Shown here one piece after another: positions 42,936-55,900 of a DNA stretch of 64,000 bases. The notes below the pieces were generated by a model. The model saw only the letters and a list, made by a program, of their open reading frames with translations, ran no database searches and was not told where the DNA came from. This DNA comes from Aplysia californica. Lineage: Eukaryota. The stretch spans positions 2,094,009 to 2,158,008 of the forward strand of contig NW_004797278.1 of NCBI RefSeq assembly GCF_000002075.1. The letters run 5' to 3'. Numbering within the stretch: the first letter of the stretch is position 1; each line of letters opens with the position of its first letter. The position numbers and the translations under genes are program-made.

Positions 42936-43489
42936 GTGTCATGACATGGTGGAATCAGGTGCTCGTCAATTTTTGGGCATAAGAAGTTATTGGTCATTGG
43001 TAATTGGTAGGAGAATTAGTATTATCACAGGCAGTACAATGCCAAAGGTGCTCCTCCCTCTTCTCCAGAATCCATGAAAGGGTTGGCTTGCTGATCATGC
43101 CCATCATCAGAGGGAGTTATAGGTATAATCTTAAAGCTTGTTCATTTGACTTGCTTTCGATTAAAAGAATCCCCATCTATCTTGAATAGAAATCGAGATA
43201 TTTCTAATTGAAGGAGGTGGAGGTCTCCTGGTATCATAGTTAAAATTAGAGAGAAAATGGCTGCCAAAGTTTGGTGACTTCCAAAGCTCGAATACCCCTG
43301 GACACTAGAAAGTTACAATTTTGGTACCTGTGATCAACATTTTTCAGTAAAATCCAACAAGATGGGCACAAAAGGTGCTGAGCAACACGTTAAAATTTTT
43401 TTTTTTAATTGCCAAATTGGTGGGAAAAATGCCAGTTTCTTCAATTTCATTACTTTGATGAGCGCCTGATTTCACCATCATGCCTCACA
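42936..43489. mobile_element. Non-autonomous TIR element, copy 2 of 2
   Basis: TIR ..GGTGGAATCAGGTGCTCGTCAA / TTGATGAGCGCCTGATTTCACC..; homologous to 29089-29523 with extra internal sequence. Confidence 0.8.
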
Positions 43490-46949: not shown

Positions 46950-49900
46950 CTATGGCTCGTAGAGCTGCAGATCTAATTTCACAACAACTTCACCAGTTTC
47001 AACTTCATGGAGAATGAGCCTTTTAGTTATTGGTCCACGCCTGTCTCCACTCTGGTCTAGAACATCCTTAATGCGAACCTCAGTGCGGCCTAAGAAATCT
47101 GAGAATGAAAATAACAATTAAAAACATGGAATTTTGGGTCTACTACGTTAATAAGCATGTATACAATCAAATTATTCTAATACCTATGAAAAAATTTATT
47201 ACGAAACTATGTTAATTTATTCCTAAATGAAAATGCTTGGTTATCAGCCTCAATAAAACAGAAAATCTGTCAAATTATATCTTTATACTGTATCGATAAG
47301 TCGCTCAAAGATACAGAAAAACATGTTCGGGCAAGTGAGTGAGTCACCAATGACTAGGACATACCGTTAGGAGAATACAGGTCCCGATCATACACCGTAA
47401 AGCAGAGGGTGTCCCTCTCTACATCCCGTAAAAGAAACTGCATTGATGCATTCCATCGAGGGTTTAAAGTTCCAGGAATAACTTTTGTGCGATGTTCTTG
47501 TGACCCCATGCTAACCTCACAGTATGGGTCACTTTTACCTGAGGAATAAATAAATATGAAGTTTTTCACAACCAAATGAGGTACTTCACTTTTCCATCTT
47601 TTAAATATGGCAGACAATTAAAAACAGCACTAACAATTTGAGAAGTCAAAAAACAATGATGCAAATTCTTAAATTCCTGAGGTGACATTTATCCTTTCCA
47701 AATACACAGACACAAGTTGATTATCACTGAAGAATAATTTGAGAAACAAATTCCTCTCAATTTTCATCTGTTTTGAAGCAAATAATTTTAGGCAGTTCTT
47801 GTAAAATCCATTATTGAAGAATTCTTTCTTCACACCACGTGTAAACATGAAGGCTGCCAAAAGCATTATTAATTTTAAAAACCACTTTAAGAATTCATGA
47901 AACTCCAGAAAATAGTTATTAAGTTAATGACAACAGAACAGCTATATATAAGATAGCCCAAAATAGATAAATGATTTTGATAAAGGAATCAGAACACTTA
48001 AATTCAGGTAGCATTATGAAAGTGTGCACGAACAATGCTCCATAAATTTTACATCTCTCGATATATGGCATATTCACAACAACATTAGACATAGGTACAA
48101 ACATTGTTTATGTTTGGCAACTGTCTTGGTTCAACAATGCATCTGTCCAATATTGAACATTTCCTGAAAATGGGGTTAGTTTCAAGACTCTTAAAGTAAA
48201 AAAAAACACAGAGAATGAGTACATTTTGTTTTCTTTGAATAAGTAAATACTACAGAGAAAAACACTAGCTCACATTTTAAAAAAAACCTTAACAGATGGT
48301 ATTTGTCTAAAATTGTAACTGCATCAAAAGATGTTATTTGTTTGACGATGAATTGGCCTCAAAAGACAGTACTTGCTATATCATTATGCTGCATTGGCAG
48401 ACCGTATAACAAAAGCGCATCTAATCTTCTCCAAAAATCACTGGACGGAAATCTAATCTTTAGCATAATTATGCAAGGCCAGCAAAATGATGAAAGTAAC
48501 TTTCTAACGTAAAAATGCACACACAAAGACACAATTTCTGTATTTCCTGCTCATGACTGTATAGAAGTATGTGGAGTAGATTGCTCATAGAGAGGTTGAT
48601 GCTGCATCACAAAATTCTATGTCAATAAATACACAGAAAGCTCATCAAAGTTAGATGACTACCATACTCCTGTAAATATGTAACACTCAAACAAACACCC
48701 AAAAATTCATTTCAAGGATAGAAAAATGGTAAGAGTAGAGGGAAGCCAAGAAAATGGAAATGGCTTGAAGGTCATATTTGAGTCCATTTGAGCTACTTCA
48801 TCATTACTAGTTTAAATGGTACACCCCTTGNNNNNNNNNNNNNNNNNNNNNNNNNNNNNNNNNNNNNNNNNNNNNNNNNNNNNNNNNNNNNNNNNNNNNN
48901 NNNNNNNNNNNNNNNNNNNNNNNNNNNNNNNNNNNNNNNNNNNNNNNNNNNNNNNNNNNNNNNNNATCCGACTACACACATAAAGTTCATTTCTAAGGCA
49001 GACCTCTGAGGTTTGGGATGGAGGTTTGTCTTTGGCAGGCCTAACTCTCATTTTACAGACACACTGGCAATGAGTTGACAGGATAGAAGACAAAGTAAAA
49101 GAGAAAAGATGACATCCTATGCCAGAGAGTTCACAGCAATGGAATGGCACCCCACCAATGTGCATCTGTAATCTGTATCACCCCCCCCCCCCTCCTTCCA
49201 CCCGCCAGTTTAGAGAGAAACCGATAGAATGACAGAATTAGAAAAATCAAATAAACCAATGATACATTTGCAACACTACAAACAAGCTCAGAAGATCTCC
49301 GAAAATAACTAACAGAGTTACAGGTAACAAAAGAAAATCGAGGATCTCTTTTATGCAAGTCAGAAATGCCAGCTACTAAATTCAGTCAAAGCAAAGTGTC
49401 CAAACTAAATACAAGTACATGTACTTGCCAAGGCAAATATTGCAGAAATCTAACCCAATTATTTTCTCTCTTCCATAAAACCTGACCTGAGTGGTCCCGC
49501 CTTTGTCTTCACGAGAACTATTACAACACCCACTGACATAAACTAACTCTGTTTGTTATTCCTGTTTTGTCTTCTTGCTTATCCTAACATTAAGAGGCCA
49601 TTATTGTATCAGATTGTATCAATGACTCTCTTCTTGAGTTCTCTCTTTTCTTACAAAAGTTACAAAAATACTAAACCATGAACCAGTCAAGAGGAAATAA
49701 GGCATGGATATAAAGTTTCTTTTTCCCTTTCTTCGGTCAATAACCTTGTCTAGGCAAACAAGCTAAATCATACTGACAAATTACTAACTGATAACCATCA
49801 GATTCCTTGTCCAGCAAAAATATTACATCCGTATGTTATCAAAAATGAAAGAGTAACTTTGTACATTTTCTTTCCTGTTTATTCATAACAGAATATTTCA

Positions 49901-52900
49901 GAAATACCATTAAGATGTTATGGTAAAGTACACATGAAACAATGATTAAATCTATGAATTCATACCAATGGCAAGTCGAAATAATATATTTATGATACAC
50001 TGATATTAAAATGAGTATTTTCCATTCAAAATCAATTTTATTCCACAAAGTTGTGAGTAAAAAATAGAACCTCACTCCTGATAAACAACGTGAATCAGTA
50101 TGACTAAGAGAAAAGCAAAATAACAGCTGTACACCTGAGAAACAGGTGCCAGATTCATAACTGTTATACAATCATAAACCTACACTACTGCCAGTAAGAT
50201 CTAACTTGTCAAATTCAAGAAAGAATTAACCAGACAAACATTACCCCTCTTTTGACTAAAGGTTCCATACATACATACCACTACTTCAAAATGCTTAATT
50301 AAAGAAAAATGGGTTAAATAGGAAAAGGTTTCTTACGTAACCAACATTCATGCAGTAGAATGCTTAAATGCACAACCTGATGTAAAACATCAACTTACCG
50401 GACTGATCAGAGGCTTTCAAGTGGCAAGCCTCTTGAATGACAACAAGGATTCTGCCAACACTAGGGCGCTTCACTAACAGAATAAAACAATAAACCAAGC
50501 GTTGCAGTGCATGCAGTTCAAACTCAAATGATGCTCAGCAGGAAACTAAGGTACAGCAAAACAAGAGACAACGAAAAGATTAAGAGCCCGAAGTGAGGGA
50601 CGTGCAGGTGGTGAAATCCCCAAGATGCAATGACAAGCACAAGTAACATAAAAACAACAGAACACACGGAACTGAGTACAATAATAAATAATCATCAGTG
50701 CAATAGATAATGAAAGGGTTAAGACTGACACTCACACAGCTTAAAAAAGATTCCCATANNNNNNNNNNNNNNNNNNNNNNNNNNNNNNNNNNNNNNNNNN
50801 NNNNNNNNNNNNNNNNNNNNNNNNNNNNNNNNNNNNNNNNNNNNNNNNNNNNNNNNNNNNNNNNNNNNNNNNNNNNNNNNNNNNNNNNNNNNNNNNNNNN
50901 NNNNNNNNNNNNNNNNAACAAAAATGAGAAAAAATGTGTAACTTAAAACACGACTGAAAAGGTGCGGTGGTAAAAAAAGAAGCATATTGTTTCCTCTTCT
51001 AAAGTCACAATTTTTCAATCACAATGATGGAAATGGAGATTTCCAGCTGGGAAATTATGAATACTATTACTATACAAAAAACACTTGGCCTACAGGAAAA
51101 GAACACCTCCTATATCCCAAGCAGCTTCAAATCAAGCCAACCAACAAAAAAAGTATGTCTTTATTTTTCTTCCCTCAGCCCTCTATTCTGACTCAAAACC
51201 TGTCGTAAGGACATACCCAGGGTTTGCCTTTTTGAGGTCTTTTAACAAATTTACTTTCCAGAAAACATATGATTGGAAAAGAAAAATGCCCATACTGTGG
51301 TCATATTTCTTATCGTTTTTCCATTTATGGAAAGGAGGGGGGGAGAGTGAAATCTAACAATTTAACATAACCAGACTGCGTCGAAGGACTCATGTATCAC
51401 CTGAAACCTTTATGCCTAGTAAGGCAGGAAAATAAAAAACCTCCGGAGCAGAACTGAAGAATGGCAGTGATTGGCATGCAGTACAACACCGGTACACAGA
51501 GGTTCTGGTGCACAAACTATCAACACAAGACTGAGGGTGGGTAGAGGCTGACAAGACTATGCACTCTTCAGAGTCATCTTCTGAACTCAAAGTGAGGTGT
51601 GAATGAGTTGCGTCTCTTCAAAAAACAAGAATTTAAGGACATTTCGCCTTGTTATGAAATTACATGACGGGTCAACATTTGTATTTCTCATTTGAAAGAA
51701 GGACGTTTAAAGTCCAACAAAGCATCTTCAAATAACAGAACAATTATTTTTGGTACTTGTTGCTGAACCCAAAAATCATTGCCTTTAGTATGAGATAACC
51801 AAATTATTGGGTACTCAAAATATTGTAATTCTTTTACCAAAGAAGTATTCACAATGGGTGTAAGTAAAAAGATTTACCAAGTACCACCGGTTTTGTTTGG
51901 AAATGAATCTAGTTCATGAATTTTACTGCACATAAATCAATACATAAGAAACTGATAAACTAATAACTTCCTTTACACAGCCTCACTTTGGCTCAGAGAG
52001 AACTCTGCCATAGACTTCTTCACCCCATGAGAAAGCCTCAAACCTACCGGCATCAAGAGGAGGCCTTAGGCCCACTCCTTCCTCCACCACCACCAGCGCT
52101 CTGCCAACTGGTTTTGCTCGCAAGGCTACAAGTGCCATTTACAACAGAGAAGAGAGTGTCAACATGTTTTACTTTCTTGTCACTTCAGACACTGACAGTT
52201 CCATTCAACACATTAAAGCCAGTACAATGTACACAAGACACCTTAGTATTTATTTGACTCACATTTGAAGGGAGAAGAAGGAAAAAGGTAAGTGCCTTAG
52301 CACTCTGCTGATAAGACTACATAACCTTTTCGGAGAAAGTTTGCATGGGGTCAAGGGTAAATACAAATTTTTTAAACCTTTACATAGAAAAAAATAAAGT
52401 AGATCAGTACTTTATACACAGAGAAAAAGATTGAAGAAAAAAACAGGACAAAAAGGTAGAATGAGGTAGAGGACAGAAAACAATGGAAATGAAAGATGGG
52501 TGAATTTCGGAATACAGGAGATGGTTAGAAAGACAGAAAAAGACAGGAAAAAAGTAATAAAGACTAAGTCACAGTAACTAAACTGATATTAAAATAACAG
52601 CACGATTTGAAATGCTTAAGGACTAGAACACTAAAAAAAAAATGTACCCAAAAATCAAGGTACAATACCAAGTTTCAAAAATAAAACTTGAAAAATGGCT
52701 TTTTAGGTCACCACTTTGAAAAGGACAAAGATCTGTATGCAGATCTGTTAAAACTGTCCAATTGTTAACATTTTTTAAATGTAATAATCATCATCATCAT
52801 GGCATAAGAAAAAAACTTTGAAACGTAATTCAACTGACTGTGCTGAAAGCACATTAAGACATTGTTTAAAAATGAAGCTTTTTTTTTACTGATTATGATG

Positions 52901-55900
52901 AAAGTGGTAAAATACACTAGACCTGTCAAACTCCAAAACAACATAATAAATACATGAATATTCAAGAGTAAACACCTTCAAACTAAGCTTACTGCCCCAA
53001 AATTCTTACTGATTAGTCAGACTAAGTGTAGGCTCTGTCAGAGTAAATAAACTCCAAAATATTCATAACACGAAACATCTCTAGACAATGTCATAAAAAG
53101 CAACTCCAAACACCCCCCTCCTCCCATAAACACAATTCATGTCATATTCTTGTTCAGGTGGATTTCAAACAATGATAGAATACACACTTTTCCTTCTTAC
53201 CTCCTATAGAGCCTTAAGGTAAACTGTTTAATAATTGTACCTATTTTAAAAAAGAAAGAGCTATATAAGCATTATAATATAAAAACAGAATTAATCTCAT
53301 TCGCTTTCACCTACCCGAGTGGGCTCTCTCCAGCTTTCTCTTTGCTTTGTCTTTGTACTGTTTGGAGGCTGCTTCTATTTCTCGGATCCAGGTATCCCTG
53401 TTTCGCATGAAGGTATATTTTAAAATGCTAAATAAACTGACCATTTCATAAAAACTACTTTGTAGGACATATTTTAAAAATATTTTTACATATGCCCTCT
53501 AGTACTGCAAAATCTTACATTCCTCACTCAATATCAACTTGCAGGCTAACGGCATGGTTGAAGAGAAAACAGCTATTATGCAGTTTTACTACTCTCGCAC
53601 ACCTACCATTCCACATGAGGAGTCCACGAGAAAAACGGGAATAGTCACAAACTGAAAATCAAGAGGGTATCAATTTTGAACGCTTGTTGACTCATAACTG
53701 TATTTCTGCTCAGCATTAGGTTGATTATTGTTGTTCGATTTCCAACAAACATATCACATAAACCACCAGTCAAACAAACATCCATGAGTCTACAAGGTTT
53801 GAAAATTGACACCCTCATTATTTCCAGTTTGCGACTATGCCCGTTTTTCCCGTGGACCCCTCATATGTGAAACTTGCCAAAGAGAAGATATCAAAGTACA
53901 CATTATATGATAACCAAAACAACTTCTTCTCAGGGATACTCAGAAGAGCACAAACTTTCTTTCACTCCTGAACTCATAGAGGCTGCAGGATTTTGAAGTC
54001 ATGAAACAGAAAAGTCTCTGACTGTAAATGTTTTAAGCCCCATCGAAACAATTTAGAGCATTATAATATTTCTGAGGCAGGGGTAATCTCTAAAAGATTC
54101 AGAAGACTGAAATTTGATGGAAGTGCTAAATGTTTCAACAGAGAGCAGCAAGTAATGTAACGTAAACCAGACCTCTCTACATGGGACACAGCTTTCAGGT
54201 TGATGATTCTGTCACTTGTGATGTGGAACAAAGTAGGATCTGTGTCATCAACAGGCTTCTTTACCGTTACTTCATTCAGGAAAATGGGCTGAAAAGAAAA
54301 CAATATTTGATTTGGTTGGAGTTCTAGTTTTGGCACCACTTTTACAGTTTCCTAAAGATATCAAACTGAGGTAGAGCATGGTGAATAATAATGATTGTGA
54401 ATAGACTCCAAACAACCCAAGATCCAAAACAACTTGAACCAAAGAAAACAGGAAATGCAGCAAGTAACACACTTAAGTTAAACAGACCCAAGTCACATTT
54501 ATATGTCAATGGTACGAGCTAGAATACACGCACATAGAATTTGATCTTTGTTATCTATGTCTCAATCTATTGTCATTTTCTCAGTTAGGCTATATAAAAT
54601 TATACATATGACAAGTAGTGTCTGAGAATTACAATAACACACAAACAAATGCCATGAAGAAGCAGAATCATATTGAAAATTGCACTAGGATTCCAAATCT
54701 GTAAGGAGACATACTTCTCTTTTCTTTTTCTTCAGAAATAACATTATTAACAAAATAAATAAAAGAGTAAGGAGTATCTATCTGCAAATGACACCCATTT
54801 CCATTATTCTGAACTCATCAATGGCTAGAACGGCGTGTTCCTATGGCAGTTACCAGTTTATTAGAGAGAATATCACGAATGGTATTTTCACTAGTATCCC
54901 TAGACAGCAGTTGTTTATTGACAAAGATATACTTACAACACGATACATTTTAAACTGTGTACTTGTATCAAAGAGGTGAACAGTGCTGAAGGTAGTGCCC
55001 AAAGGACGTGATGTGGTGGCAAGCATGAGGAAATCATTGAACAAAAATCCTATAAGCTCCTTGTTGCTTTTTGCCTGTCAGAAGGGGTGAGGAAAAGACA
55101 CACTTGAAATAATTGACATGTACAACCGAAAATAAAATAGGAACTCTTTGAATCACAAACAAAAACAAATAATGATGGAGTGACAGAGATCACACACTGA
55201 CTCAATTCTCCATTACCTTGGAGATTATTCGACGATAACAAAAGATGAAAAAACTGTGTTCCCTGTAAATGCACAAAGATAAGTCATGTAGAGTTCAAAT
55301 ACATTATCATTTTTTTTTACCGGACCAATCACACACAAATGAATAGAAGGATATACCATTTCAGAAATAACCCCCCCCCCCCATTCTCATATCTACTTCT
55401 TTTCATGAAAGAGAATAAGAGAATAAACATCTATAATATTTCAAAACTAGGAGAAATGTGTTCATCCTGTACAGATAAACTCTTCCAAAGTACATAAATG
55501 TCTGAGTAAACATAACATTATGTGTCCCAAGAGTTTCTCTGTTCTATCTGATGCCACTTACTAATTTCGTCTGAGCAGACCTTACAATAAGCAGCTTCTT
55601 TTCAAGATTACAGTCTTCATATAATGAACCTTCTCCTTAAACTAGTGGGTTTTTTTTTTTTTACAGCAGTCTCCTCCCAAAATGAAATGTGTGACTGCAA
55701 AAAGCTGAATTCTCTTTTAATAAAAGGAACAACATGTTTTACATTTAATTCATGAATTTCGATTTCACCGATTCCATTTTAAGGTTTTGACATTTATGAG
55801 TTTTGACATTTTATTTGACCAACTTTTAAAGAGCTACAACTGACATCAATCTCACCATAGAACATATCAATAGACTGAGCATTTCAAAGTTTCGATTTTT

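What the first reader, a model, noticed from the sequence alone, without database searches (positions are those of the whole stretch)
50399..52125. Tandem-duplicated, probably mutually exclusive exons for the first strand of the intersectin C2 domain
Seen: between the PH-end exon (53315) and the GKSDPY exon (47538) are two phase 1-1 exons of 78 and 75 nt, [27 protein letters not shown] and [26 protein letters not shown]. Both have good splice sites and open frames, share GTTGGCAGA (VGR), and match the single G-R-hydrophobic-E-x3-L strand of intersectin C2. They are too diverged to be collapsed haplotypes, yet neither has decayed. Including both would duplicate a core strand and skipping both would delete it, so mutually exclusive use is inferred. 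I know of no description of this for intersectin. Gaps at 50759-50916 and 48831-48965 could hide more variants.
Basis: partly seen in the sequence, partly recalled or inferred. Interest (0 to 1): 0.85.

Follow-up and report, generated by a model that had tools for sequence, protein, structure and literature searches.

The report
Calcium-site switch exons in intersectin
In the sea slug Aplysia and other molluscs, the endocytosis scaffold intersectin has two duplicated exons that are used alternately, and only one carries the first of the five aspartates of a calcium-binding site, so splicing probably decides how this Cdc42 activator responds to calcium.

Summary
Real and conserved. Exons A (52125-52048) and B (50473-50399) of Aplysia intersectin-L are both spliced in singly: one run shows PH-A-C2 joints, another study shows PH-B-C2; neither shows A-B, skip-both or a third variant (contigs only). 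These joints bridge both assembly gaps. Both exons are under purifying selection, and the A-then-B pair is orthologous across gastropods, bivalves, octopus and chiton. Pairs or triplets also occur in nemerteans, a brachiopod, an annelid, chelicerates and amphioxus; their common origin is unresolved. B carries the aspartate equivalent to synaptotagmin-1 D172 (20/20 mollusc B, 0/16 A), completing a five-Asp Ca2+ site; 18 of 22 species have exactly one such exon. A GCAUG (Rbfox-type) lies just upstream of B in 5 of 6 protostome loci. Ca2+ binding and tissue pattern are untested. No paper found. New member of a known kind.

The parts
53315..53397 (-). PH-end exon of intersectin-L (C-terminal helix of the PH domain); its donor is the common 5' partner of A and B
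   Evidence: joints at 53315; Pfam PH_13 weak match
52048..52125 (-). Alternative exon A, 78 nt, phase 1-1: C2 strand 1 plus first half of Ca2+ loop 1; Leu at the first Ca2+-ligand position, an Asp one residue later; weak acceptor
   Evidence: (joints depth 158.6 and 147.1 in run X8)
50399..50473 (-). Alternative exon B, 75 nt, phase 1-1: same element, carrying the first Ca2+-ligand Asp
   Evidence: (joints depth 20.1 in run X19)
50406..50408 (-). Codon of Asp1 in exon B (aligns without gaps to synaptotagmin-1 C2A D172)
   Evidence: sequence; alignment to 2r83; 20/20 mollusc B exons
50510..50515 (-). TGCATG 41 nt upstream of the B acceptor, candidate Rbfox-type silencer; GCATG in the same 90 nt in Physella, Biomphalaria, Lottia and a tick
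   Evidence: function inferred
50349..50354 (-). Second TGCATG 46 nt downstream of B; not conserved in the other gastropods; would favour B, against the simple silencer model
50759..50916 (.). Assembly gap inside the A-B intron; bridged by spliced joints, left unfilled
48831..48965 (.). Assembly gap inside the intron after B; bridged by spliced joints, left unfilled
47365..47538 (-). Constitutive C2 exon; holds Asp2 (47530-47528), Asp3 (47389-47387), Asp4 (47383-47381) and the first base of Asp5
46950..47098 (-). Last coding exon of the C2 domain (rest of Asp5 codon to the stop; end approximate)

Best explanation
A and B are ancient tandem duplicates of the exon for strand 1 and the first half of Ca2+-binding loop 1 of the intersectin-L C2 domain. 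Cells normally include one of them, chosen by sample or tissue (shown for single inclusion; tissue unknown). B completes the canonical five-aspartate Ca2+ site; A lacks the first ligand at its canonical place. So the B form is inferred to be a Ca2+/phospholipid-sensing C2 attached to the Cdc42 GEF, and the A form Ca2+-insensitive or of changed affinity. Choice is inferred to rest on trans-acting factors, most likely Rbfox-type repression of B through GCAUG near its branch point, with the weak A acceptor skipped when B is free. No hard steric, frame or U12 barrier exists, so some A+B leak is likely, and A+B would behave as B with a longer linker.
For: Shown: PH-A-C2 joints in run X8 and PH-B-C2 joints in run X19 of another study, no A-B joint. 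Aplysia proteins with A (P0172) and with B (P0185) both exist in databases. dN/dS Aplysia-Physella 0.04/1.12 for A, 0.29/1.42 for B. Position-concordant orthology in 28/28 gastropod, 24/24 gastropod-bivalve and 16/16 gastropod-octopus/chiton comparisons; Aplysia A+B as one clade rejected, p-AU 0.014. Gapless alignment of B loop 1 and loop 3 to the five Asp of synaptotagmin-1 C2A. Asp1 in 20/20 mollusc B and 0/16 mollusc A; exactly one Asp1 exon in 18 of 22 species with several copies, including amphioxus, Paralvinella, Lingula and Lineus. A forms strand 1 at pLDDT about 93; model matches ITSN2 C2, 3jzy, rmsd 1.4. GCATG within 90 nt upstream of B in 5 of 6 protostome loci, before A in 0 of 7, against about 6% of other acceptors; position rule from PMC2777236. 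All nine spliced invertebrate proteins I read from short Logan/ENA/JGI contigs carry one exon.
Against: RNA evidence is contigs from two runs; contigs drop minor forms, and the raw-read runs gave 1 and 0 reads. Many annotation models join A and B. A keeps an Asp one residue later in 11/16 molluscs, which might still bind Ca2+. Horseshoe crab, scorpion and sea spider keep two exons with no Asp1 in either, and Tubulanus has it in both. Aplysia has a second TGCATG downstream of B; Lineus and amphioxus lack the upstream motif. The motif was found after looking. No Ca2+-binding data exist here. A single Asp change is not always decisive (Drosophila SYT4, PMC8164606).
Confidence: 0.62

Rival explanations
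1. Alternative exons that retune rather than switch the domain: both forms bind Ca2+, A through its shifted Asp, or the difference lies in membrane or partner contacts of strand 1, loop 1 and the PH-C2 linker.
For: Asp one residue later in 11/16 mollusc A exons and Glu in 2 more; A is more conserved than B among heterobranch snails (23/25 vs 17/23); three chelicerates keep two exons without Asp1.
Against: Invariance of Asp1 in B with the other four Asp intact, and the repeated one-with, one-without pattern in other phyla; chiton, octopus and limpet A have no acidic residue there.
Confidence: 0.22
2. Two independent cassette exons: A-only, B-only and A+B are all regular products, and the real switch is only whether B is in.
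For: RefSeq lists A+B next to single forms in Octopus sinensis, oysters, chiton, Tubulanus and Tachypleus; A+B folds; both exons are multiples of 3, the A-B intron is 0.3-2.2 kb, AG-free zones are short, no U12 donors.
Against: No A-B joint in either Aplysia run; only single forms among listed RefSeq isoforms of Physella, Haliotis asinina, Gigantopelta, Babylonia, Littorina, Mytilus, Lineus, Centruroides, Branchiostoma; none of nine contig-derived proteins is A+B. Gene predictors tend to join in-frame duplicates (own knowledge).
Confidence: 0.13
3. Exclusivity is enforced by competing long-range RNA pairings (docking site and selectors).
For: A C-rich tract near 51345 can pair with G-rich tracts near 53115 and near 49195 in Aplysia, above dinucleotide shuffles.
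Against: These are simple G/C runs; natural control segments reach the same scores in 22% and 7% of draws; nothing above shuffles in Physella, Biomphalaria or Lottia; no conserved intron blocks.
Confidence: 0.06
4. One copy is a dead duplicate or an assembly artefact.
For: Gaps lie nearby; the A acceptor is weak.
Against: Both exons are spliced in RNA, under purifying selection and present in the same order in gap-free snail loci.
Confidence: 0.01

Closest known systems
Tandem duplicated exon substitution events (Martinez Gomez et al., PMC9741552)
   Same: Homologous neighbouring exons used alternately, old, often convergent between phyla, enriched in Ca2+ and muscle genes.
   Different: Intersectin is not named in the main text of that paper (0 hits; supplements not checked); vertebrate and echinoderm intersectin models show one exon.
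OGDH exons 4a/4b (PMC7969005)
   Same: Mutually exclusive duplicated exons give Ca2+-sensitive and Ca2+-insensitive forms.
   Different: A metabolic enzyme; exclusivity there is enforced by distant branch points near the 5' splice site, which the short AG-free zones here (28-124 nt in introns of 0.3-2.2 kb) exclude.
Dysferlin C2A / C2Av1 (Fuson et al. 2014, cited in 10.1101/2022.01.18.476802; PDB 4ihb, 4iqh)
   Same: Alternative splicing of a C2 domain gives Ca2+-dependent and Ca2+-independent forms (title and passage; fold match).
   Different: From memory, alternative first exons rather than internal duplicates; Ca2+ binding is blocked by basic residues that salt-bridge the ligands, not by loss of Asp1. 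The paper itself was not held.
Vertebrate ITSN1-L / ITSN2-L
   Same: Same DH-PH-C2 tail, same exon borders around strand 1, same fold.
   Different: One exon; Arg at the Asp1 place and Asn at Asp2 in shark, ray and bichir. Reviewed splice variants affect EH, SH3 and DH regions, not C2 (PMC3645719).
Rbfox-controlled mutually exclusive exons: FGFR2 IIIc, egl-15 5B, alpha-actinin NM (PMC2777236)
   Same: (U)GCAUG in the upstream flank represses one exon of a pair.
   Different: Here only the motif and its conservation are shown; no binding or genetic test.

Membership tests
Intersectin long form (DH-PH-C2) | DH, PH and C2 exons in order, best matches intersectins | tested here: met
   P0185 is RefSeq intersectin-1 of Aplysia californica and matches the window's exons
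Tandem-duplicated mutually exclusive exons | Neighbouring homologous exons of like length and the same phase | tested here: met
   78 and 75 nt, phase 1-1, 8/24 identical, same motif
Tandem-duplicated mutually exclusive exons | Each exon is spliced to both flanking exons on its own | tested here: met
   all four single-inclusion joints seen
Tandem-duplicated mutually exclusive exons | Double inclusion and double skipping are absent or rare | tested here: inconclusive
   not seen in two contig sets, which drop rare forms; A+B models in other species
Tandem-duplicated mutually exclusive exons | Both copies under purifying selection | tested here: met
   dN/dS about 0.04-0.25 between gastropods where dS is not saturated
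Ca2+-binding C2 domain (synaptotagmin/PKC type) | Five acidic ligands at D172, D178, D230, D232, D238 positions - B form | tested here: met
   gapless alignment to 2r83
Ca2+-binding C2 domain (synaptotagmin/PKC type) | Five acidic ligands - A form | tested here: not met
   Leu at the D172 place; Asp one residue later
Ca2+-binding C2 domain (synaptotagmin/PKC type) | Measured Ca2+ and Ca2+-dependent lipid binding | not testable with these tools
   needs purified domains
Rbfox-repressed exon | Conserved (U)GCAUG in the upstream flank | tested here: met
   5 of 6 protostome loci vs about 6% background
Rbfox-repressed exon | Rbfox present, binds, and its loss changes the choice | not testable with these tools
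   Pfam Fox-1_C search of the genome was blank and uninformative
Docking-site/selector clusters (Dscam type) | Conserved competing intronic pairings | tested here: not met
Sterically, U12- or NMD-enforced exclusive exons | Very short intron or distant branch point, mixed spliceosome sites, or frameshift on double inclusion | tested here: not met

The most novel reading that the evidence does not exclude
Ancestral animal intersectin-L was a Ca2+-sensing Cdc42 GEF, and several phyla (molluscs, nemerteans and brachiopods, annelids, ticks, amphioxus) kept or independently evolved a splice switch that turns this Ca2+ site on or off by tissue, while vertebrates fixed the site in the off state.
Probability: 0.35. 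Interest if true: 0.78.

Novelty: new member of a known kind. Interest (0 to 1): 0.6.

Why it matters
The role of the intersectin-L C2 domain is little understood (own knowledge), and the vertebrate sequences read here lack two of the five Ca2+ ligands. Molluscs carry a complete site in one splice form and an altered one in the other, conserved across all four classes sampled. This gives a natural pair of proteins differing in about 17 residues for testing whether Ca2+ controls an endocytic Cdc42 GEF, in Aplysia, a standard model for synaptic plasticity. It also flags an annotation problem: many mollusc and chelicerate models join both exons, and the Aplysia RefSeq record found here holds only the B form.

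Tried and rejected
Dead duplicate or haplotype artefact: rejected. Third copy in the gaps: no support; not fully excluded, as the gaps were left unread. Docking-selector pairing: the only candidate is a G/C-run match reached by 7-22% of control segments and not conserved; a first duplex scan timed out. Steric, distant-branch-point, U12 and NMD enforcement: not met. Deep origin: all 23 protostome first-type exons form one side of a branch at 76/79 only, and AU tests rejected none of four rival histories (p 0.12-0.37), so one origin versus several is open. Raw-read runs X23 and X24 held almost no reads. Three contig look-ups for short isoforms and one for Nymphon were blank. Paper searches found no description of this splice event. 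The reads tool printed a loose end at the edge of the gap 48831-48965; I did not use or record it, and I laid none of the runs that look like DNA. Five unnamed vertebrate-type proteins (P0356, P0365, P0369, P0371, P0375) were left out unexamined in case they are human.

Full report
Observation. The window holds the 3' end of the single intersectin-L gene on the - strand (DH, PH and C2 exons from 62335 to about 46950). The RefSeq protein of Aplysia californica (P0185) matches these exons, which identifies the genome. Between the PH-end exon (53397-53315) and the next C2 exon (47538-47365) lie exon A (52125-52048, 78 nt) and exon B (50473-50399, 75 nt). Both have AG..GT borders, phase 1-1 and open frames, and each is single-copy. 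They share 8 of 24 residues. The acceptor of A is weak in three of four gastropods (5th-14th percentile; 36th in Biomphalaria); that of B in Aplysia is average.

Gap test and expression. I laid four runs on 47421-53410. Run X8 has the joints 53315^52125 (depth 158.6) and 52048^47538 (147.1); B appears there only inside an unspliced contig at intron-level depth (16). Run X19, from another study, has 53315^50473 and 50399^47538 (20.1) and no contig over A. No A-B joint, no skip-both joint and no loose end at 53315 or 47538 were seen. The joints cross both N gaps, so the flanks are one transcription unit in the assembled order; the gaps are intronic and were left unfilled. Limits: these are contigs, which drop rare forms; sample names are coded, so tissues are unknown; the two raw-read runs held 1 and 0 reads.

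Conservation. Database proteins show two variants at this position in Haliotis, Gigantopelta, Babylonia, Littorina, Physella, oysters, mussels, scallops, octopus, chiton, nemerteans, Lingula, Paralvinella, scorpion, horseshoe crabs, sea spider, tick and amphioxus. Genomic loci confirm tandem exons: two, A then B, in Biomphalaria, Physella (both gap-free there) and Lottia; two in a tick and in Branchiostoma; three in Lineus; one in a crinoid. dN/dS between Aplysia and Physella is 0.04/1.12 for A and 0.29/1.42 for B. A resembles A and B resembles B in all 28 gastropod, 24 gastropod-bivalve and 16 gastropod-octopus/chiton comparisons, and a tree rejects Aplysia A+B as sisters (p-AU 0.014). So the pair predates the split of mollusc classes. 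Beyond molluscs the 27 columns do not decide: protostome first-type exons group at 76/79, the amphioxus pair (19/27 identical) groups at 81/85, and none of four rival histories was rejected.

What the exons change. The B form aligns without gaps to synaptotagmin-1 C2A across loop 1 and across loop 3, placing aspartates at all five ligand positions (residue numbers D172, D178, D230, D232, D238 from my own knowledge). The first lies in exon B (50408-50406); the other four lie in the constitutive exons. It is present in 20/20 mollusc B exons and 0/16 A exons. Of 22 species with several copies, 18 have it in exactly one exon, one in both and three in neither. In Lingula and Lineus the Asp-bearing exon comes before the B-type exon, the reverse of molluscs; in amphioxus and Paralvinella the partner exon has Asn. 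Shark, ray and bichir have Arg at this place and Asn at the second ligand. AlphaFold places exon A in strand 1 at high confidence, and the model matches the ITSN2 C2 structure. Caveat: 11/16 mollusc A exons keep an Asp one residue later, so A may retune rather than abolish binding. Ca2+ binding is inferred, not shown.

Is exclusivity strict? Probably not by force. Both exons are multiples of three, the A-B intron is 294-2185 nt, AG-free zones are short and there are no U12 donors. A predicted A+B protein (Biomphalaria model) folds with B as strand 1 (pLDDT 87) and A without structure (about 50), so double inclusion would give a B-type domain on a longer linker. RefSeq lists A+B beside single forms in octopus, oysters, chiton, Tubulanus and Tachypleus, but only single forms among the listed isoforms of nine other genera. 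All nine spliced invertebrate proteins read from short Logan, ENA or JGI contigs carry one exon. Whether A+B models are leak products or predictor artefacts I could not test.

Regulation. GCATG lies within 90 nt upstream of B in Aplysia (-41), Physella, Biomphalaria, Lottia and the tick, never upstream of A in seven loci, and before about 6% of other intersectin acceptors, although the introns do not otherwise align. (U)GCAUG in this position is the Rbfox repression signal, also in known exclusive pairs (PMC2777236). The inferred model: Rbfox blocks B in cells that express it, so A is used; elsewhere B wins over the weak A acceptor. Against it: a second TGCATG downstream of Aplysia B, no motif in Lineus or amphioxus, and the pattern was found after looking. 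I give this step about even odds. A candidate competing RNA pairing in Aplysia is made of G/C runs, is common in controls and is not conserved.

Comparison and verdict. The kind is known: tandem duplicated exons (PMC9741552), Ca2+-site switching by exclusive exons in OGDH (PMC7969005), and Ca2+-dependent versus independent C2 forms in dysferlin. Five searches found no description for intersectin, and a review lists no C2 variant (PMC3645719); subscription papers are mostly not searched. Both forms already sit in databases as automatic predictions. Verdict: a real, old, expressed alternative-exon pair (about 97%), mainly single inclusion (about 85%), most likely a Ca2+-site switch (about 62%). 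New member of a known kind; interest 0.6.

Noticed in passing
L007:35689-39871 (Lineus longissimus): Three copies of the exon; an extra one lies upstream of A, and RefSeq uses each alone (isoforms X1, X2, X3).
   Followed up: partly
P0299 (Physella X3), P0330 (Tubulanus X9), P0421 (Centruroides X6), P0435 (Ostrea X7): Annotated isoforms end right after the PH-end exon and lack the whole C2 domain; could be a third outcome or intron-retention models.
   Followed up: no
P0172 versus P0185: The Aplysia B-form record is 482 aa longer than the A-form record; long and short forms also differ by about 250-330 aa in Haliotis, Physella and Babylonia, apparently independent of the A/B choice. The extra segment lies upstream and was not located.
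   Followed up: no
window:32230-33021 (-) and 30106-30771 (+): Broken LINE-like reverse transcriptase fragments downstream of the gene (weak RVT_1 match for 32698-33021).
   Followed up: partly
window:57439-57814 and 31680-32061; 43115-43489 and 29139-29523; 53612-53867: Dispersed repeat copies (82% and 73% identical) and a 256-nt imperfect palindrome in the intron before the PH-end exon, MITE-like.
   Followed up: no
window:45988, 45503, 44842, 44769, 44286 (-): Several AATAAA signals after the stop codon; the 3' UTR runs at least to about 46000 judging by the share of words held by RNA-like runs.
   Followed up: no
P0372 / L006 (tick): Exon B has Asp1 but loop 3 has Asn and Glu in place of Asp3 and Asp4, so the Ca2+ site is altered in both tick forms.
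   Followed up: no
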